Positions 6,331 through 17,725 are shown, counted from the stretch's first letter. The stretch: 22,083 nucleotides of DNA from Octopus sinensis (GCF_006345805.1 NW_021836954.1:1-22083), one strand, 5' to 3'. Translations and numbers: made by a program. The notes: generated by a model from the sequence alone, not told the origin.

Positions 6331-6964
6331 CTGCCACAAAGCAGAAGAACCATGGTGTAACCCACTATGGTGTGGTAAACTTTCAGACCCTAGTCTAGAT
6401 TGCGAATCCTCTGTACCCCAGGATGGTTCAGCTCTCCACCCGTTAAAAGCCACCGTTTACGGAATGAGCATAACAACGTAGCTTTTGCGCCCGTGCAACC
6501 GCCAGTCTATCGCGTGTGGTGGGTGGATCTTCAAGTTGCTACACGCATTCTTAGTAGCTTAGAGTAGGCTCGAATTAGAGATTATTCTTTGTGGCTAATG
6601 GCGTGAGTCCTGATTGGAAGAAGAAGAAGAAGACAGCAGCAACAACTATAACGACAATGGCGTCATCGATTTATTGATCTCTTCTGAATATATGGCGCCG
6701 CATTTTATATTGATAACTCATGATATTCTACATTGGTAGAATCATTACAGCTCCAGACAAAATGCCTTCCCGTATTTGTCCCGTGTCCGTATGTTGTGTG
6801 TTCAAATCTATCCGAGTTCAGCTTAGTCTTTTATCCTTCCGGAGTCGATGTGACTGTTTCCGCCTCATCATATTTCTGGTTTTGTTTGGAGATCGTTGGG
6901 CAGTGAATTGATTGGGAGAATCGTTTGAGCATCGACCAAAATGGCTGGTGGTATTCAGTTTCAT

Positions 6965-7192
6965 ATTTCTTTACTGTCCACAAGGGGCTACACACAGAGG
7001 GGACAAACAAGACAGACAAACGGATTAAGTCGAATATATCGACTCCAGTGCGTAACTGGTACTTATTTAATCGACCTCAAAAGGATGAAAGGCAAAGTCG
7101 ACCTCGGCGGAATTTGAACTCAGAATGTAAAGACAGACGAAATACCAAGCATTTCGCCTGGCGTGCTAACGTTTCTGCCAGCTTACCGCCTT
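6965..7192 (-). mobile_element. SINE, abundant family 1, tail subtype A
   Basis: The reverse complement aligns along its length with 17143-17375 (ctggcagaaacgttagcacgcc...gagttcaaattccgccgaggtcgactttgcctttcatcc...tccgtttgtc...gtaaagaaat). Confidence 0.85.
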
Positions 7193-7224
7193 CATATTTA
7201 GTTTCAGCTTTTATGAGTACATCA

Positions 7225-7608
7225 TGAGTTAAAATTTCACCAAGGTCAGATTTTCATTCCTTCGGGTCGATAAAATAAAGCATCAAAATGCCTTGTGCTA
7301 TTCAGTTGCACGTTTTACATCATGAGTTCATCTCCCGCTGAAGTCATCTTCTCTTTTCTTTCTTCTGGGTGGGCTATTCATTTTCCTCTAAACTTTTGCT
7401 CCTATATCACTGTAAAAAAATTACTTAAGGCGGTGTGTTGGAAGAATTGTTAGAGCATTGGACAAAACGCTTTGCGATGTTTGGTTCGGAGTTCAAATCA
7501 TGTCGAGATCATCTATCTCTTTTATCCTCTGGAAATCATTAGAAAATACAATTGAAATTGATATTATCAAGTAACTCCTTACCACAAATTTCTGGCCTTG
7601 TACCTACG

Positions 7609-7610
<2 letters not shown>
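7225..7610 (+). mobile_element. Two degenerate family 1 SINE pieces (about 7225-7285 and 7427-7610)
   Basis: Recognisable motifs gagttaaaatttc..aaggtc, ttcgggtcgataaaataag, aaggcggtg, gagttcaaat, aaatttctggccttgtacct. Confidence 0.55.

Positions 7611-7654
<44 letters not shown>
7611..7654. repeat. (GT)n microsatellite
   Basis: Direct reading. Confidence 0.95.
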
Positions 7655-7656
<2 letters not shown>

Positions 7657-7889
7657 CTTTGGGTAAAAGAAAATACAAGAATATCAGTTATGATTTTATT
7701 GAATATAATCCCTCTCAGATTCACACACTTATTGCAGCGGCCCTCTTTCTAAGCCCTATAAATGAATTCGGAAGGTTGGGCCTCTAACCAGGCCTTTCGC
7801 GACACCTTCAAAACCAGGAACGTTCCAGCTACCCCTCATATATTAGAAAAAGGGCGAACGATTGGCGGAACCCTTAGGCTTTTACATCC

Positions 7890-8175
7890 TGAGTCCAAAT
7901 TTCACGAAGGTCAACTTTGCCTTTCGTCCTTTCGAGGTCGGTTAAATAAAGTATCAGTCACGTGCAAAGTCGTGACTGATGGATTAGTCCTTTTCCTTCA
8001 GGACTGTTGGTTTTGTGAGCCTGAATCAGACATTATTGAGTTCAAATTCAGCTGCAAACAACTGTACCTCTCATCCTTTCAGAATCAAGAAAATAATGTA
8101 CCTGTGAAGTACTGGGGTCGATGTTATAGATTTAACCTCTTTCCTGATAACTGCTGGCATGGTGCAAAGATTTTT
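7890..8175 (+). mobile_element. Two degenerate family 1 SINE fragments (about 7890-7955 and 8035-8175)
   Basis: ctgagtccaaatttcacgaaggtcaactttgcctttcgtcctttcg; gagttcaaattc...gtactggggtcgat. Confidence 0.55.
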
Positions 8176-8180
8176 AACAA

Positions 8181-8270
8181 TTCTTCTTCTTCTTCTTCTT
8201 CTTCTTCTTCTTCTTCTTCTTCTTCTTCTTCTTCTTCTTCTTCTTCTTCTTCTTCTTCTTCTTCTTCTTC
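8181..8270. repeat. (TTC)30 microsatellite, i.e. a (GAA)n tail of the adjacent minus-strand R4 fragment
   Basis: Direct reading; it runs directly into the 3' UTR at 8271. Confidence 0.95.
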
Positions 8271-8545
8271 CATTTCTCGCCGAGTGTTTTCTGTACACCT
8301 AGGGCAGAGAAGCTCATTGTATACATTCCCGGATTACACACGCAAATTCACAGGTAAAATATGTATCTAAAAAAATTAATAAATAAATAAATTCATGAAT
8401 GGATGTTGTTTTCACAGCGACAATGCCCTTCTCAGTACATGAGTCGTTCCAGTTAACACAATTTTTTGCACTTCCTGTAGGGATGGTAAGCCTGGTATCA
8501 TTTTAAAAATAGGTTTCAATACCTTTTTTTTTTATCATTCCTAGA
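8271..8545 (-). mobile_element. 5'-truncated R4/Dong-like LINE fragment A (ORF C-terminus + 3' UTR)
   Basis: Minus strand encodes LGMIKK...MIPGLPSLQEVQKIVLTGTTHVLRRALSL* (stop 8412-8414), nearly identical in protein to the end of the full-length ORF; the 3' UTR end is homologous to 9190-9245. Confidence 0.85.
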
Positions 8546-8555
8546 GATACTATCA

Positions 8556-8732
8556 TTTGTACAAGTTGGATCCAAGACTCACCCAGAGACCTCAAGAGAC
8601 AAGTTGGAAGTTCATGCTGGTGTTATGCCTAGGGTGGCATATATTTGGTTTTGTACAAAGTGTTGTTCTAGAGAATGTTTAAGAAACCATAAGAAAATTA
8701 TGCTTGTTTTAAAACTTGAGATTACATAGAAA

Positions 8733-8734
<2 letters not shown>
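8556..8734 (-). mobile_element. 5'-truncated R4/Dong-like LINE fragment B (last codons LSM* + 3' UTR)
   Basis: Aligns with 13410-13580 (ttgtacaagttgg..ccaag.ctcacccagagacctcaagagac...ttgagattacatagaaagt); followed by (TTA)n at 8734-8768. Confidence 0.85.
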
Positions 8735-8768
<34 letters not shown>

Positions 8769-9093
8769 GAGTGAGAGAGCAGTTCATGCCATCAAAGTGA
8801 CACTGGGGTAAAATATACGAAGCCCAATATACCCATCATGACTACCCGTCTGATAAAGGTACACCAGGCACATGCATCACAACCATATGTGCGCGACATG
8901 GTGATCTCATATCAAGATAAACAGCACATGACCTTGCAGGTGGGGCCCAGTTAGAATTTTCTTCAGGTTGAGTAGCCCATCCCGCTCAAACGGTCCCTGA
9001 ATAAGGGTTGTTTAAGGATGTTGAAAGAACCACTTCCAATCAGTTAAGATCAGAAGCCATGAGAGCCACTGCCCGGTACTGCATCAGGGCATG
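8769..9093 (-). mobile_element. Short non-coding element flanked on both sides by (TTA)n, copy 1 (strand given relative to the TAA sense)
   Basis: 8769-9020 is the reverse complement of 14560-14793 with the same terminus (ctgctctctcactc next to the repeat array); no credible ORF and no A/B boxes seen. Confidence 0.75.
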
Positions 9094-9108
9094 TTATTAT
9101 TATTATTA

Positions 9109-9165
<57 letters not shown>
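9094..9165. repeat. (TTA)n array: tail/target at the 3' end of the full-length R4 element
   Basis: Direct reading. Confidence 0.95.
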
Positions 9166-9166
<1 letters not shown>

Positions 9167-12100
9167 TTTTTTTTTCTTCTTTCAAATTTTCTTCCATTTC
9201 TTGCCGAGTGTCTTCCCGACTCCTAGGGCAAAGAAACTCATAGTGTATATTGGTAGGCCATTAAACCAAACTCAGTAGTTCGTTAATTTTTTTTTTTTTT
9301 TTTTTAAGTTAAATTAAAATGCATGAGCAGCAACAGTTCTCACATCGACAATGCTCTTCTCAATACGTGTGATGTACCAGTTAAGACAATCTTTTGCACT
9401 TCTTGCAGGGATGGTAAGCCAGGGATCATTCTCATATAATTTCGGTTCCCTTCTTGATCATTCCTAGTGCTCCTACGATCACTGGTATTGTAATCGCCTT
9501 GAGATGCCACATTTTCTCAATTTCAATGAGTAGGTCTTTATATTTTCTGAGCTTGTCAAACTCTTTCGCTGAGATATTATGATCACAGGGGATGCTCATG
9601 TCGATCAATAAGCAAACTTTATTGTTTTGGTCTTTCACAACAATATCTGGTTTATTGGCCTTGATGGTTCGGTCTGTATGTACTGGAAAGTCCCACAGAA
9701 TGGTTACATTTTCTCCTTCAGTTACAGCCTCAGGGTGGTGATTATACCACTTGTCGGCCAGTTTTGATATTGTAATGCCGACTTATTAGCCAGTGGAGAT
9801 ATTGGCCAACTCTGTCATGTCTAATTTATACTCCACTGGTGCTAAGACTTTACATCCAGAGATTAGGTGGTCCACTGTTTCAATCATGTCGTTGCCAGAA
9901 TCGGCATTTTGGGTCTGCTCCATTTTTCATCACATTGGCCTGGTAGTTCCGGGTTGATAGGCTTTGGTCTTGAGCAGCCAGGATGAAACCTTCGCTCTCT
10001 GCTTTTAGCCCTGAGCTCCGCAGCCACTGATGGGTTTGCTTCTGGTCAACATCAGCTTGTTTGCTGCGGGTCACATATTTGCCGTGCAGAGGCTTCTCCT
10101 CCCACCTATCAGCCAATTGCTCGTGCGCTTTTTTCATTGCCATCATTTTCACCTTCTTTGCAACAATAGTTGCCGTACTTCCCTCGGGTTGTTCAGTTGG
10201 GTATCCTGCACGAGATCAATAGCAAATTTTTTGCTTTCCTTGATGATAGAATGAAGCTTCTTTCGTCTCTCGTGATTTTCCACGAGCTTTAGCATCCAGT
10301 CATTCGATATTTCGAGATATTTGGCCAGTCCAAATGTGGTTGTTTTGTAAGCTAGTTCAAATTGGATCAGGCCTCGACCTCCTTGGGCTCTGGGAAGGTA
10401 AAGGCGATCTACGTCTGCCTTTGGGTGGTGCATCCTATTACAACTCAGCAGCTTGCGTATTTTTCTATCTATATTCTTTACTTCACTCATATTCCAGTTC
10501 AACACATTGTAGCTATAAGTAACAACTGGAACTGCTATGGAATTTATAGCTAACACCTTGTTACGTGCATTTAGTTCAGATTTCTGGACTGCACGAACTC
10601 TCCTATAACATTCCTTCCTGATTTTCTCTTTCATGCTTGCATGCTGAATACCAGAACCTTCATTTATCCCTAAATATTTGTATGTTTGTTCTTGCTCAAG
10701 CTCTCTTATGACTGTGTCAACATCTAACACGACTGAATTTGTGGTCTTCACTTTCCCTTTCTGGAAAGTGGCCTTGGCACACTTCTCAAGTCCAAACTCC
10801 ATCCCGATGTCATCACTGAATGATTTCACGGTGCGCAATAGGCCTTCAAGTTCATTATTGTCTTTACCATAAATTTTTAAGTCATCCATATAAAATAGAT
10901 GGCTTATTTTTTTATTGGCAATTTTTACCCATACCTTGTTCTGTTTAATTCACTTGTAAGGGGTATTAGGGCTATGCAGAATATTAAAGGTGAAAGTGAG
11001 TCACCTTGAAAAATTCCACAGTTGATGTTTATATTTTCTGAGGCAAGTACTCCATTAGAGTGGTATAATTGGAGATTCGTATTCCACAACGACATATTGT
11101 GCTTCAGGAAGTTTGAAATCACAGGGGAAATTTTGAAGATGTCCAGCGATCTCAAGATCCATGGATGCGGTATACTGTCGAAGGCCTTTTTATAGTCAAT
11201 CCATGCGGTGCTGAGATTTCTTCGCTTGTTGTGACAGTTCTCAAGGATCACTACGATTGATTAGCAGTTGATCTTTGCATCCGTAAGAGCCTCGGCAGCA
11301 CCCTTTTTGTTCAATGGGGAAAATATCGTTCTTCTCCATGAATGCATATGTTTTCTCCGCCAGGATAGATGTTAGGATTTTATACGTGGTGGATAGACAG
11401 GTATAGGCCGATAGTTTTTTGGAAGGTTGGTTTCGTTATTCTTTGGGAGTAGGTAAGTAATGCCACTTGCTAACCATTCAGGTGTTTTCTTTGGGTCTCT
11501 CATAATTCCATTGAGCAGCTGAACTAGCTTACCGTGTGCGCACGGGAGCGATGCGAGCCAGAAATTCGACACCCTATCTTTACCGGGGGATTTCCAATTA
11601 TGGGCCTTCGTGAGTGCCTTTCTTAGGTCTGCTATTGTGATGTCTTCCCATGCTTGTTGTTGTAAATTTTGGTAGGATCCTTCAGTTTGTATAATCCAGT
11701 CTGCATTTATGTTGTACGTCTTCTTGTCTCTCCAAATCTTTTTCCAAAAGTTTTGAACTTCTTCCATGGGAGGGGGGTCTTTAACGGTTACTTTCTCCTT
11801 CCCTATTTCTCTGTAGAATTTTTTGGCATTGGATGTGAACAGCTTATTTTGCTTGTAAAACTTGTTTCTCTTCTCAAATCTTCGTATTCTTTGGGCTTTT
11901 GCTTGGACTTTTTGTTTCAGCGTTTCTTTTATTGATATCAGTTCTTCTCTTGGTGAGGATCCAAATTTTCTCTTCATCTTTCTTCCTGTTCTGGATCTTA
12001 CATCATTTCCACATATTAGTTCATTTAATATTGATATTTCCCCTCTCATAAATTCAATCTCTTTTTCAATTTTACTTCTCCAGGTTTGATTTCTTCCCAG

Positions 12101-13016
12101 GTTTTGTTTTCTTTGTTTTTTCGGGGCATACAGCTGGTTTCAATTGCCCTAGCAGAAGCGTAAATAATTTCATTTAACTCAGTAAAATCAGGTTTTAATT
12201 CTCGTATTATTTCATTTGTTACATAGTTGCCAATTTGGATTTGTTTTTTATTTTGGTTTGTATTTGAGAGTTTATGAAGTGGTTCTCTATCATTCATACT
12301 TGTATGTCTTACAACTTCCAAGCGTATTCAGGATTTTCTGCTCATTTCTTTCTGCTATAGACTCTCTGTGTTCTTCAGCAAATGCGAGATCTTCAGTTAC
12401 TGTTGCTTTTTCGTTTTCCTGGCTATCTTTAACAGGTACAATAGAATTTCTTGTATCTTCAGGCCTTTGCGTACTTTGGTCAGATGGCAGTCTTTCAATA
12501 AGCCTCGTGGCGGGCTATACTGTTCATCTGATTCTTCATTTCCTTTGTGTCTTATATTTATGTCATTTTCCGTTGCGTGCTTGATCGCGCTTATTTCACT
12601 GTCTGTGAGTCTGTTATTTCTAAAGATATCCCTCCTCACATTTGCTAATTTGTTCTCGTCCAAATAGGGCCTACTGTCTTGATTCCGTGTTCTCCATATA
12701 CTGTAAGAGTTTGCGGTGTGTCTCTCTTGAGATGGCCTACCTAATGCATAGTAATAAGCGTATATTACTTCTTTATACTCTTCTCGGGTCCATTTGTTCC
12801 GCTTACATTTTTCTTTCTGTGGTGGTTGTGGTGGTGAACTTGGAGGGCTCGAGTTGGGGGATTTCCCGTTCAAGTGACCATCCATGTCCGTATTCGGAGA
12901 AGAGTTTGTGCCAGTTGATGACTTTTCGATCCCAGGCTGGCTCTTCCCTGGGGGACGCGCTTCCAGATTAACCATAGGACAAGCGATTTGGTATACTGAT
13001 TTAGTTTTCCTTTTAG

Positions 13017-13017
<1 letters not shown>
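9166..13017 (-). mobile_element. Apparently full-length R4/Dong-clade non-LTR retrotransposon (about 3.85 kb) inserted in (TAA)n
   Basis: Single long ORF architecture, about 40-nt 5' leader, about 175-nt 3' UTR, TAA arrays at both ends (9094-9165 and 13018-13060). The N-terminal KWTREEYKEVIYAYY...KLANVRRDI block is typical of the R4 clade from my knowledge of the family. Confidence 0.92.
9340..12975 (-). pseudogene. RT + CCHC zinc knuckle + PD-(D/E)xK restriction-like endonuclease polyprotein (about 1200 aa), frameshifted as assembled
   Basis: KSPGKD, NYRPI(T)CL, DYKKAFDS, GIFQGDSLSP, YMDD, YKYLG; C-x2-C-x8-H-x4-C (CRFCNDMIETVDHLISGC after one frame correction); KPD-x14-D and KLRKY; ends ...VLRRALSM* (TGA 9340-9342). 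Joins track ORFs 12397-12975, 12046-12321, 11372-12049, 10925-11251, 10149-10889, 9880-10152 and 9432-9638. Confidence 0.93.
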
Positions 13018-13060
<43 letters not shown>

Positions 13061-13269
13061 GAAGGTGGCGGGCTGGCAGAATCGTTGGCACGCCGGAGAA
13101 AAAGCTTAGTGACATTTCGTTTGTCTTTTCGTTCTGAGTTCAAATTCCGCCGAGGTCGACTTTGCCTTTCATCCTTTCGGGATCGATAAATTAAGTATCA
13201 GTAAAACACTGGGGTCGATGAAATCGATTATCCCCTCCTCCAAATTTCGGGGCTTGTGCCTATAATAGA

Positions 13270-13270
<1 letters not shown>
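13061..13270 (+). mobile_element. SINE family 1, tail subtype B, with (AAT)n tail
   Basis: ctggcagaatcgttggcacgcc...gagttcaaattccgccgaggtcgac...ctggggtcgat...cttgtgcctataatagaaa then AAT repeats. Confidence 0.85.
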
Positions 13271-13305
<35 letters not shown>

Positions 13306-13310
13306 TATTA

Positions 13311-13389
<79 letters not shown>
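13269..13389. repeat. Spacer-less inverted microsatellite (AAT)n|(ATT)n, centre at 13304/13305
   Basis: Direct reading: ...aataataa|ttattatt... Confidence 0.9.
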
Positions 13390-13906
13390 TGTTTGACTTT
13401 TGCTTTATATTTGTACAAGTTGGCTCCAAGTCTCACCCAGAGACCTCAAGAGACAACAGGTTGGAAGTTCACGTTGTTGTTATGCCTAGTGTGCCATATA
13501 TTTGGTTGTTTTTTGTGTTATACTAGTGGATGTCTAAAAAAAAAATGTTTGTTTTAAACCTTGAGATTACATAGAAAGTATTTTGCGTAGGATATGAGCA
13601 GTTCCTATGAGCACTATCTTTTGAATTTCTGCCATTTTTGGGTTTCCTGGTATCTGAGTTAGGTAGCAATCAGCCCCTTTTGCTATCATTCCCAGGGTAC
13701 CTCTGACAACAGGTATTGTTTTAGTCTTCAGGTTCCACAGTTTGCTGATTTCTATTTCAAGATCTTTATATTTGCTCAGTTTTTGGTAGGTCTTGACAGA
13801 TACGTTTATATCGATTGGGACAGTCATATCAATGAGGAGGCATGTTCTTTGTTTGAAGTCTTTCAATATGATGTCTGGCCTATTTGCATCTACCTTCCTG
13901 TCAGTT
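13390..13906 (-). mobile_element. 5'-truncated R4/Dong-like LINE fragment C (endonuclease domain + 3' UTR)
   Basis: Uninterrupted TDRKVDANRPDIILKDFKQRTCLLIDMTVP...KLSKYKDLEIEI...GTAHILRKILSM* (13567-13906); TTA arrays on both sides. The poly-I/N N-terminus of the track ORF is microsatellite. Confidence 0.92.
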
Positions 13907-13925
13907 ATTATTATTATTATTGTTA

Positions 13926-13967
<42 letters not shown>

Positions 13968-14044
13968 TATTATTATTATTATTATTATTATTTGAAGTAA
14001 TAGTAGTATTTTTAGTTGTAGTAGAATTTGTAATATTAGTATTA

Positions 14045-14254
14045 AAGCAGTGAGCTGGTAGAATCGTTACCGCACCAGACAAAATGCTTAACAGCATTTC
14101 TTTCGGCTTCACGTTCTGGGTACAAATACTGCCGAGGTCTACTCTGCCATTCATTCTTTCGGCGGTCGATAAAAGTAAGAACCTGCCAAGTACTGGGGTC
14201 GTGTAATCGACTTGTTTTCGCCTATAAAATTTCAGGCCTTGTGCCTATAGTAGA

Positions 14255-14256
<2 letters not shown>
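14045..14256 (+). mobile_element. SINE family 1, subtype B, more diverged, with (AAT)n tail to about 14377
   Basis: gagctggtagaatcgttac...ctgccgaggtctac...gtactggggtcg...ggccttgtgcctatagtagaaa. Confidence 0.8.
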
Positions 14257-14329
<73 letters not shown>

Positions 14330-14377
14330 TAATAAACATATAATAATAATAATAATAATAATATAATAATAATAATA

Positions 14378-14793
14378 AAAGATGGGCTACAGCAAATATT
14401 CTGCTCAATACCACAGATTTGCTTGTCAGTTGTTTGACCTTTACCAGTTGACCATGTCCCTTAGTGGATGACGATATTTGCATCTCTGATCGCGAGCAGA
14501 AGTAGTTGGGGAGCATCATAGACATGTGTTGAAAGGAATTCTTAGAGGTTTGGATAATTCATCCTTAAACAATCCTTATTCAGAGACCTTTTGACCAGAA
14601 GAAAATTCTAATTGGGTCCCACCTGCAAGGTCATGCGCTGTTTATCTTGATATGAGATCACCATGTCGCGCACATATGGTTGTGATGCATGTGCCTGGTG
14701 TACCCTTATCAAGCGGGTAGTCATGATGGGTATACTGGGTTTCGTATATTTTACCCCAGTGTCACTTTGATGGCATGCACTGCTCTCTCACTC
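14378..14793 (+). mobile_element. Short non-coding TAA-flanked element, copy 2
   Basis: Shares its last about 235 bp with copy 1 in inverted orientation; flanked by (AAT)n and (AAC)n/(AAT)n. Confidence 0.75.
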
Positions 14794-14829
14794 AATAACA
14801 ACAACAAAAACAGCAACAACAACAACAAC

Positions 14830-14881
<52 letters not shown>

Positions 14882-14883
<2 letters not shown>

Positions 14884-14944
14884 CAAAGTGACACTGGGGT
14901 AAAATATACGAAGCCCAGTATACCCATCATGACTACCCGTCTGA
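14882..14944 (-). repeat. Inverted fragment of the short element
   Basis: 14882-14939 is the reverse complement of 14714-14771 (58 bp, one mismatch). Confidence 0.9.
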
Positions 14945-16995: not shown

Positions 16996-17142
16996 GCTTG
17001 AAACTAGATATCGCAGGAAACATCCCATCAAGTGTCTTATCGATTCTATTAATCTCTTAATCTATCGCCTCAGTAACCTTCGAATTTATCCATTTATATG
17101 TAATGTTTATAATTTTGATTATCAATATATTATTTAAACTAA

Positions 17143-17725
17143 GGCGGCGAGCTGGCAGAAACGTTAGCACGCCGGGCGAAATGCGTAGCCGTATTTCGTC
17201 TGCCGTTACGTTCTGAGTTCAAATTCCGCCGAGGTCGACTTTGCCTTTCATCCTTTCAGGGTTGATAAATTAAGTACCAGTTACGCACTGGTGTCGATAT
17301 AATCGGCTTAATCCGTTTGTCTATCCTTGTTTGTCCTCTCTGTGTTTAGCCCCATTGTGGGTAGTAAAGAAATAGGTAGTTCGTCTGTCTTTACGTTCTG
17401 AGATCAAATTCCGCCGAGGTCGACTTTACTTTTCATCCTTTCAGGGTTGATAAATTAAGTACCAGTTGCATACTGGGGTCGATCTAATCGATAGGTCCCC
17501 TCTCCTAAAATTTTGAGCTTTGTGCTTAGATTAGAAAAGTATATATTACTTAGCTGTTCAAGGTGGTGAGATGCCAGAATCGTTAGCACATCGGGTTTTC
17601 GTCTTTTCGTTCTGAGTTAAAATACCGCCGAGGTCGACTTTACTTTTCATCCTTTCGGAGTCGATAAGATAAGTACTTAATCCTTCCCTCGAAATTGCTG
17701 ATCATGTGCCAACATTTGAAATCAA
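17143..17725 (+). mobile_element. Tandem trimer of family 1 SINE (subtype A 17143-17375; 5'-truncated subtype B about 17378-17540; degenerate unit about 17560-17725)
   Basis: The core ttctgag.t.aaat.ccgccgaggtcgacttt.c.tttcatcctttc appears three times (about 17212, 17396 and 17611). Confidence 0.85.

What the first reader, a model, noticed from the sequence alone, without database searches (positions are those of the whole stretch)
8769..14793. Short non-coding element that appears to use the R4/Dong target: candidate non-autonomous passenger
Seen: two copies (8769-9093 and 14378-14793), inverted relative to each other but in the same orientation relative to their flanking TAA arrays. They share an identical end (ctgctctctcactc + AAT) and about 235-250 bp, and differ beyond that. 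No ORF, no pol III boxes, and no end similarity to the R4 copies in this window. Known: R2 has short internally deleted parasites (SIDEs). Inference: an R4-mobilised SINE/SIDE-like family or the UTR of an unseen R4 subfamily. This is the best candidate for an undescribed component here.
Basis: partly seen in the sequence, partly recalled or inferred. Interest (0 to 1): 0.72.

Follow-up and report, generated by a model that had tools for sequence, protein, structure and literature searches.

The report
Short TAA-flanked retroposon-like repeat, unclassified
Two full copies and one overlooked fragment of a short non-coding repeat sit in (TAA)n microsatellite arrays beside Dong/R4-type jumping genes; they probably spread by the same TAA-directed copy-and-paste route, but three copies cannot show whether this is a new parasite of Dong or an ordinary truncated element.

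Summary
Copy A (9093->8769, minus) and copy B (14378->14793, plus) share a 252/234-nt 3' module. It is 94.4% identical apart from one 18-nt indel, and it ends in the same ...CTGCTCTCTCACTC next to (TAA)n. The upstream parts (73 nt in A, 182 nt in B) are unrelated. There is no ORF, TIR, tRNA/7SL/5S head or ribozyme, and no similarity to the two LINE 3' ends in the window.

It lacks the last 25 nt and abuts a TAA array in the wrong orientation.

The neighbouring LINEs are R4/Dong-type: RT, CCHC, a restriction-like endonuclease, and (TAA)n on both sides.

A and B match the orientation of their arrays, as the LINEs do, so TAA-directed target-primed reverse transcription is the most likely origin. 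Three points weaken the "Dong passenger" reading:
- No autonomous partner shares the 3' end.
- The 5' boundary is undefined.
- tRNA-type SINEs in the window carry their own TAA-type tails.

No further copy could be retrieved from any accessible collection. I cannot separate a short non-autonomous element, the 3' UTR of an unseen Dong subfamily, and a generic TAA-tailed retroposon. Interest is modest.

The parts
8769..9020 (-). Copy A, shared 3' module (252 nt), ending ...CTGCTCTCTCACTC next to (TAA)n
9021..9093 (-). Copy A, 73-nt upstream part (X). It is unrelated to B's upstream part and directly follows (TAA)24.
14560..14793 (+). Copy B, shared 3' module (234 nt; lacks 18 nt that are present in A)
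14378..14559 (+). Copy B, 182-nt upstream part (Y). It directly follows (AAT)42. It has a marginal frameshifted resemblance to the endonuclease motif PDIV..LLID (17.7 bits; 4 of 150 shuffles score as high).
14884..14944 (-). Fragment C: 61 nt of the shared module, 98% identical to A. It lacks the last 25 nt and abuts B's (AAT)18 tail in antisense orientation. With B it forms a 61-nt inverted repeat with a 111-nt spacer.
   Evidence: (D18)
8734..8768 (-). (TAA)11.7 downstream of A
9094..9165 (-). (TAA)24, lying between the LINE1 3' end and the 5' end of A
14255..14378 (+). (AAT)42, lying between the tRNA-type SINE (14042-14255) and the 5' end of B
14794..14883 (+). (CAA)13 followed by (AAT)18, downstream of B
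9166..13017 (-). LINE1: a full-length but frameshifted R4/Dong-type LINE (Myb-like WTREEY, RT, CCHC, KPD..D..K endonuclease), with (TAA)n on both sides. Context only; it does not share the A/B 3' end.
13390..13904 (-). LINE2: a 5'-truncated Dong-type LINE (endonuclease C-terminus, 153 bits, plus a 177-nt 3' UTR), with (TAA)n on both sides. Context only.
13061..13262 (+). tRNA-type SINE inserted antisense into a (TTA)n array and carrying its own (ATA)14 tail. It serves as a control showing that TAA-type tails can be element-borne.
   Evidence: (D12-D15)

Best explanation
A, B and C are copies of one interspersed, non-coding, retroposon-type repeat. What defines it is a shared 3' module of about 250 nt that ends ...CTGCTCTCTCACTC(AA) and runs into (TAA)n.

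The most likely mechanism is target-primed reverse transcription at (TAA)n arrays by a Dong/R4-type protein:
1. The restriction-like endonuclease nicks a TAA array.
2. The element RNA ends in UAA repeats and anneals to the nicked (TTA)n strand.
3. The RNA is copied from its 3' end.

This would give a constant 3' end, a fixed orientation relative to the array, and variable or chimeric 5' ends.

Shown here:
- The repeat family exists.
- Its 3' end is precise.
- A and B agree in orientation with their flanking arrays.
- It has no coding capacity.
- Dong-type LINEs with the same flank pattern lie beside it.

Inferred, not shown:
- That a Dong-type enzyme moved it.
- That the upstream 73 nt and 182 nt belong to the element.
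- Whether the master copy is a short non-autonomous element or the 3' UTR of a Dong subfamily that is absent from this window.
For: - Shared module: 221/234 identical plus one indel, with the same last 14 nt in A and B.
- A and B have TAA-type arrays on both sides in the sense orientation. Perfect arrays cover only 483 of 22083 nt, so ends that abut arrays directly are unlikely by chance.
- The same flank and orientation rule holds for LINE1, LINE2 and the LINE2 fragment in this window.
- An independent LINE1 copy on metagenome contig L001 also ends in (TAA)n. So does a Dong-type element of another species, L002.
- The LINEs are of the R2/R4/Dong endonuclease type: RVT_1; the CCHC and KPD..D..K motifs read directly; a C-terminal profile of 72 homologues scores 153-174 bits; a 53%-identical homologue matches R2 protein structures through RT and most of the region C-terminal to it; and homologues include a Pediculus RT family, a species listed among R4/Dong elements in PMC7998251.
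- PMC7998251 states that Dong targets (TAA)n in insects, molluscs and cnidarians.
- No ORF, and no protein in 5.8 billion resembles any frame of A or B. No terminal inverted repeats.
Against: - The 3' end of A/B has no similarity to the 3' UTR of LINE1, the LINE1-like fragment or LINE2, so no partner is identified. By analogy with R2, whose protein binds sequences at its own 3' end (PMC3414825), a Dong-type enzyme would be expected to need a matching 3' end.
- The parts upstream of the shared module are unrelated, yet the module starts at the same base in A and B. This is not what simple 5' truncation gives. It allows the unit to be only about 250 nt, in which case its 5' side is not in a TAA array.
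- Fragment C is 3'-truncated and abuts an array in antisense orientation.
- No HDV-like or other ribozyme lies at either 5' end. Rfam finds nothing. A generic fold descriptor gives no hit in A and one weak A/U-rich hit 14 nt inside B.
- A tRNA-type SINE in the same cluster carries its own (ATA)n tail while lying antisense in an array. A 3' TAA array is therefore not proof of target use.
- There are only two informative copies.
Confidence: 0.45

Rival explanations
1. Ordinary LINE debris. A and B are 5'-truncated or 5'-chimeric copies of the 3' UTR of a third Dong/R4-type LINE subfamily that has no coding copy in this window. It overlaps in mechanism with the best explanation but involves no passenger.
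For: - Most non-LTR copies are 5'-truncated.
- The window already holds such truncated Dong pieces flanked by TAA: LINE2 at 13904->13390 and the LINE2 fragment at 8733->8555.
- B's upstream part has a marginal frameshifted match, DICISDREQK*LGSIIDM, to the endonuclease motif (17.7 bits; 4 of 150 shuffles score as high).
Against: - Neither A nor B shows significant coding remnants of the very conserved C-terminus (for A, 38 of 150 shuffles score as high).
- A is not collinear with B upstream of the shared module.
- If the marginal motif were real, almost no 3' UTR would remain, whereas LINE1 and LINE2 have about 175 nt.
Confidence: 0.25
2. Generic short retroposon with its own TAA tail. The unit is only the roughly 250-nt module plus an element-borne (TAA)n tail. 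It would be moved by whatever machinery moves the TAA-tailed tRNA-type SINEs here and inserted at non-TAA sites. The upstream 73 nt and 182 nt would be flanking DNA, and the upstream arrays incidental in a TAA-dense cluster.
For: - The shared module begins at exactly the same base (CATCCTTAAAC) in A and B, and similarity stops there.
- tRNA-type SINEs at 13061-13262 and 14042-14255 carry their own (ATA)n/(AAT)n tails. One of them lies antisense in an array.
- A sister SINE outside the cluster (17373-17540) has the same 3' end with only a degenerate tail.
Against: - Both upstream parts begin directly at a TAA array in the sense orientation. That needs two coincidences.
- No pol III head is detectable.
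- No clear target-site duplication brackets the module plus tail. The only candidates are CTTTCAA/CTTTCTA for A and a low-complexity match for B (direct reading).
Confidence: 0.2
3. Not transposition. The copies would come from local segmental or inverted duplication within a microsatellite-rich, rearrangement-prone cluster, or from a DNA transposon, MITE or Helitron.
For: - All three copies lie within 6.2 kb.
- B and C form a 61-nt inverted repeat across a 111-nt spacer.
Against: - The flanks beyond the module are not co-duplicated.
- C is closer to A (98%) than to its neighbour B (95%).
- There are no terminal inverted repeats and no Helitron-type ends (direct reading).
Confidence: 0.07

Closest known systems
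R2 SIDEs (short internally deleted elements; Eickbush & Eickbush 2012, PMC3414825)
   Same: Short and non-coding. Located at the specific target of an endonuclease-bearing (RLE) site-specific LINE, in a fixed orientation, with a constant 3' end.
   Different: SIDEs keep the 5' HDV-like ribozyme and the 3' end of their R2 parent. Here no ribozyme is detected, and the 3' end matches neither Dong-type LINE present. The 5' parts of the two copies are unrelated to each other.
Dong / R4 clade LINEs and their 5'-truncated copies (Xiong & Eickbush 1993; PMC7998251; PMC3774820)
   Same: (TAA)n on both sides in the sense orientation, a precise 3' junction and a variable 5' end. Bona fide members lie next to A and B in this window.
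   Different: A/B has no RT or endonuclease coding remnant and no similarity to the 3' UTRs of the local members. Dong and R4 carry a 5' ribozyme that cleaves at the TAA junction (PMC3774820); none is seen here, not even in the full-length LINE1 with the tools available.
Microsatellite-associated retroposon families and LINE-tailed SINEs (for example RTE-derived families in Lepidoptera, PMC2887409; TAA-tailed I element, PMC3747384)
   Same: A short repeated flank attached to a simple-sequence array. The array may be the element's own 3' tail, as it is for the tRNA-type SINEs in this window.
   Different: Those elements insert largely without regard to target, and their tails come from a recognisable LINE. 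Here both ends of A and B touch TAA arrays, and no source LINE is known.

Membership tests
SIDE-like non-autonomous derivative of an R4/Dong LINE | 3' end shared with the 3' UTR of an autonomous partner | tested here: not met
   No similarity of A/B to the 3' ends of LINE1, the LINE1-like fragment or LINE2 above dinucleotide shuffles. A partner outside the window cannot be excluded.
SIDE-like non-autonomous derivative of an R4/Dong LINE | Self-cleaving HDV-like ribozyme at the 5' junction | tested here: not met
   Rfam finds nothing at gathering threshold, and nothing in relaxed E-value scans of both 5' ends. A generic double-pseudoknot descriptor gives 0 hits in A and 1 weak off-junction hit in B. 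Divergent ribozymes could escape both methods.
SIDE-like non-autonomous derivative of an R4/Dong LINE | Insertion in the partner's target, (TAA)n, in fixed orientation with a precise 3' junction | tested here: inconclusive
   Met by A and B but not by fragment C. Only three copies are available.
SIDE-like non-autonomous derivative of an R4/Dong LINE | No coding capacity | tested here: met
   Stops in all six frames. No protein in the 5.8-billion-sequence collection matches any frame.
SINE (pol III-transcribed) | Head derived from tRNA, 7SL, 5S or snRNA, with A/B boxes | tested here: not met
   ARAGORN finds nothing. Rfam E-value scans give no tRNA, 7SL, 5S or snRNA match in A or B.
5'-truncated R4/Dong LINE copy | Collinear with a LINE 3' region, with remnants of the endonuclease C-terminus upstream of the UTR | tested here: inconclusive
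   The C-terminal profile finds LINE1, LINE2 and the LINE1-like fragment but not A or B. The frameshift-aware score for A is not above shuffles; for B it is marginal (4 of 150 shuffles).
R4/Dong clade (applied to the neighbouring LINE1 and LINE2, not to A/B) | Single ORF with RT, CCHC and a C-terminal restriction-like endonuclease; (TAA)n target | tested here: met
   RVT_1. The CCHC and KPD..D..K motifs are read. C-terminal profile scores of 153-174 bits. A homologue matches R2 structures through RT and most of the region C-terminal to it. TAA on both sides, and also in L001 and L002. No clade phylogeny was run.
DNA transposon / MITE | Terminal inverted repeats and target-site duplications | tested here: not met
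   Comparing the terminal 40 nt with the reverse complement of the other end gives local scores of 4-6 of a possible 40. Target-site duplications cannot be assessed because the flanks are repeats.

The most novel reading that the evidence does not exclude
A/B is a true non-autonomous parasite family of (TAA)n-specific Dong/R4 retrotransposons. It would have a constant 250-nt 3' recognition module and interchangeable 5' modules, and would spread without a recognisable pol III head or HDV-like ribozyme. As far as I know and could find in the paper library, no passenger family has been described for the R4/Dong clade.
Probability: 0.2. Interest if true: 0.55.

Novelty: new member of a known kind. 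Interest (0 to 1): 0.3.

Why it matters
If it is a real Dong passenger, it would extend the SIDE concept from rDNA-specific R2 to microsatellite-specific R4/Dong elements. It would also provide a short RNA for defining what a Dong-type protein recognises at the 3' end. That is relevant because R2-type enzymes are being studied as site-specific insertion tools. It would help explain how TAA arrays grow into nested retroposon clusters like this one as well. If it is only a truncated UTR or a generic TAA-tailed repeat, it is routine repeat annotation.

Tried and rejected
**Searches for more copies (all empty):**
- Exact 22-mer and 20-mer scans of the conserved core in metagenome, viral and prokaryote-genome contigs.
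- A six-frame "peptide trick" query of A and B against 5.8 billion proteins.
- Close-relative scans with a LINE1 ORF to fetch DNA of the same species.
- An exact look-up of a window ORF.
- Sequence strings searched in the paper library.
- The only DNA from the same or a closely related species that I obtained was a 2-kb metagenome contig, L001, which stops in the TAA array.

**Similarity leads that failed their controls:**
- An apparent nucleotide similarity of the A core to the LINE1 C-terminal coding region looked significant with mononucleotide shuffles (0 of 500). It vanished with dinucleotide shuffles (39 of 400).
- Faint protein-like matches (VVMMGILGFV to PVVVGALG; DICISD..IIDM to the endonuclease motif) were tested with a frameshift-aware profile alignment. 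They were not significant, or only marginal.
- A shared 10-mer, GATGGGCTAC, between the 5' end of B and the 18-nt indel of A is not above chance (84 of 500).
- Extending the A/B homology upstream of the module is not above chance.

**Structure and class tests:**
- RNA folding z-scores are unremarkable: A -1.07, B -0.36.
- The 70-nt hairpin at 14644-14715 is perfect at its base only in B. A and C carry the other variant there, so the hairpin is not supported as conserved.
- The Ceph-domain motif CCTTGGGAAAG (PMC5786205) is absent.
- Helitron and TIR readings were rejected from the ends.
- For the ribozyme test I used only Rfam models and a generic fold descriptor, not any viral sequence.
Full report
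**Observation**

The window is repeat-dense invertebrate DNA with no identifiable gene. The two copies are real.
- A occupies 8769-9093 and is read on the minus strand. B occupies 14378-14793 on the plus strand.
- The repeat finder reports them as the longest inverted pair (I1: 236 nt, 91%). blastn gives A 74-325 = B 183-416.
- A global alignment of the shared module has 221 matches, 13 mismatches and one 18-nt indel, which is 94.4% identity outside the indel. The last 14 nt, CTGCTCTCTCACTC, are identical and are followed by AATAA.
- TAA-type arrays lie on both sides of each copy, in the sense orientation. For A these are (TAA)24 upstream and (TAA)11.7 downstream. For B they are (AAT)42 upstream and (CAA)13 then (AAT)18 downstream.

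The parts upstream of the shared module, 73 nt in A and 182 nt in B, are not similar to each other. They are also not similar to the module or to anything else in the window.

It consists of 61 nt of the module, 98% identical to A and 95% to B. It lacks the last 25 nt, and its 3' side runs into B's (AAT)18 array in antisense orientation. B and C therefore face each other as a 61-nt inverted repeat with a 111-nt spacer.

**Surroundings**

The minus strand of 9166-13017 is a full-length but frameshifted LINE, which I call LINE1.
- It has RVT_1.
- Read directly from the translations, it also has an N-terminal WTREEY Myb-like stretch, a CCHC motif (one Cys mutated) and a KPDIVV...LLIDMS...K restriction-like endonuclease.

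A second family, LINE2, is present as a 5'-truncated copy at 13904->13390 and as a 3' UTR fragment at 8733->8555. A profile built from the C-termini of 72 homologues scores 174 bits on LINE1 and 153 bits on LINE2.

Homologues of about 1100 aa are widespread in invertebrates, including Penaeus, Oculina, Diaphorina and Pediculus. One that is 53% identical matches solved R2 proteins through RT and most of the region C-terminal to it.

PMC7998251 describes the R4/Dong clade as RT plus REL-endonuclease with a diverged N-terminal Myb. It lists Pediculus among its members and states that Dong targets (TAA)n in insects, molluscs and cnidarians.

The flank pattern is consistent with that:
- LINE1 and LINE2 have (TAA)n on both sides in sense orientation.
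- An independent, 92%-identical LINE1 copy on metagenome contig L001 also ends in (TAA)n.
- A Dong-type element of another species (L002) shows the same architecture.

Calling the neighbours R4/Dong-type is therefore well supported, although I ran no clade phylogeny.

**What A/B is not**

- It has stops in all frames. A six-frame query found no related protein among 5.8 billion.
- It has no tRNA, 7SL, 5S or snRNA head and no ribozyme, either at Rfam gathering thresholds or in relaxed scans of both 5' ends.
- A generic descriptor for the HDV-like double pseudoknot found nothing in A and one weak A/U-rich candidate 14 nt inside B.
- Its folding energy is ordinary.
- It has no terminal inverted repeats.
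- Its 3' end and body have no similarity to the 3' regions of LINE1, the LINE1-like fragment or LINE2 once dinucleotide composition is controlled. An earlier apparent hit was an artefact of mononucleotide shuffling.
- A frameshift-aware profile alignment to the conserved endonuclease C-terminus is not significant for A. For B it is marginal: DICISDREQK*LGSIIDM, with 4 of 150 shuffles scoring as high.

**What it most likely is**

Across the 8.7-14.9 kb cluster, the orientation of every oriented insertion agrees with the orientation of the arrays it touches. This holds for the LINE2 fragment, A, LINE1, LINE2 and B. Perfect TAA arrays cover only 2.2% of the window.

That pattern, the constant 3' end and the lack of coding capacity fit copies made by target-primed reverse transcription at TAA arrays. 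In that mechanism the RNA's terminal UAA repeats pair with the nicked array. I put this at about 0.45 as stated, and at about 0.7 if the closely related "unseen Dong subfamily UTR" reading is pooled with it.

**Why the passenger claim is not established**

1. No partner shares the 3' end. The R2 precedent (PMC3414825) and the R4/Dong ribozyme data (PMC3774820) define such passengers by a parental 3' end and a 5' ribozyme. Neither is found here.
2. The module starts at the same base in A and B, and similarity stops there. Simple truncation does not explain that. It leaves open that the unit is only about 250 nt and that its 5' side is not in a TAA array at all.
3. A tRNA-type SINE at 13061-13262 lies antisense in a (TTA)n array yet carries its own (ATA)14 tail. 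A sister copy outside the cluster has the same end with only a degenerate tail. TAA-type tails are therefore element-borne for some retroposons of this genome.
4. Fragment C breaks the rule.
5. There are only two informative copies. They were also selected because they are TAA-flanked.

**External evidence**

I could not obtain more copies.
- Exact-word scans of three contig collections were empty.
- The protein trick was empty.
- Relative-locus scans were empty.
- Short-read contigs of the same or a closely related species stop at the TAA arrays (L001).

**Verdict**

The interpretation cannot be decided with the data available. The feature is a real interspersed repeat, best filed as an unclassified TAA-array-associated non-LTR retroposon fragment family: a new member of a known kind. 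Interest is modest unless a genome-wide survey shows discrete 5' ends at TAA arrays and no coding master.

Noticed in passing
window 8181-8554 (minus strand): A 5'-truncated 3' end of a LINE1-like Dong-type element is followed by a perfect (GAA)30 instead of (TAA)n. LINE1's own 3' end is also GAA/A-rich before its TAA array. A sister subfamily may use or generate a different microsatellite.
   Followed up: partly
window 8555-8733 joined to 8554 (minus strand): A LINE2 3' UTR fragment lacking its last 19 nt or so and its tail is fused directly to the truncated LINE1-like copy. The join looks like a template switch or a nested insertion with a deletion.
   Followed up: no
window 13061-13305 and 14042-14378: tRNA-type SINEs carry their own (ATA)n/(AAT)n tails. 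One lies antisense inside a (TTA)n array, producing an (ATA)14(ATT)29 head-to-head microsatellite junction at about 13262-13389. Such tails may seed new Dong targets.
   Followed up: partly
window 14715-14944: B's 3' part, its tail and fragment C form a 61-nt inverted repeat with a 111-nt spacer. Rfam scored it weakly as a MIR812-like hairpin. Its origin is unexplained: it does not fit the twin-priming geometry, and C is closer to A than to B.
   Followed up: partly
L001 1750-1976 (ENA ERZ22666216 metagenome contig): A 92%-identical LINE1 copy, from the same or a closely related animal, turns up in a metagenome whose record name suggests an Italian sample (its type was not checked). It also ends in (TAA)n.
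   Followed up: partly
L002 9077-9244, 12855-12944, 18781-19807, 21737-22091 (ENA ERZ25066847, another species): The same cluster architecture appears in another species: a Dong-type ORF and several short non-coding inserts (about 110-890 nt), each bracketed by same-orientation TAA arrays and not resembling the local Dong 3' UTR. TAA-bracketed short inserts may be a general feature of Dong clusters.
   Followed up: no
window 6700-8150 and 17130-17700: Many degenerate copies of the same tRNA-type SINE superfamily lie in both orientations, some with a different 3' end (...GTGGGTAGTAAAGAAATA) and no TAA tail. From memory they resemble octopod SINEs. I did not test this.
   Followed up: no
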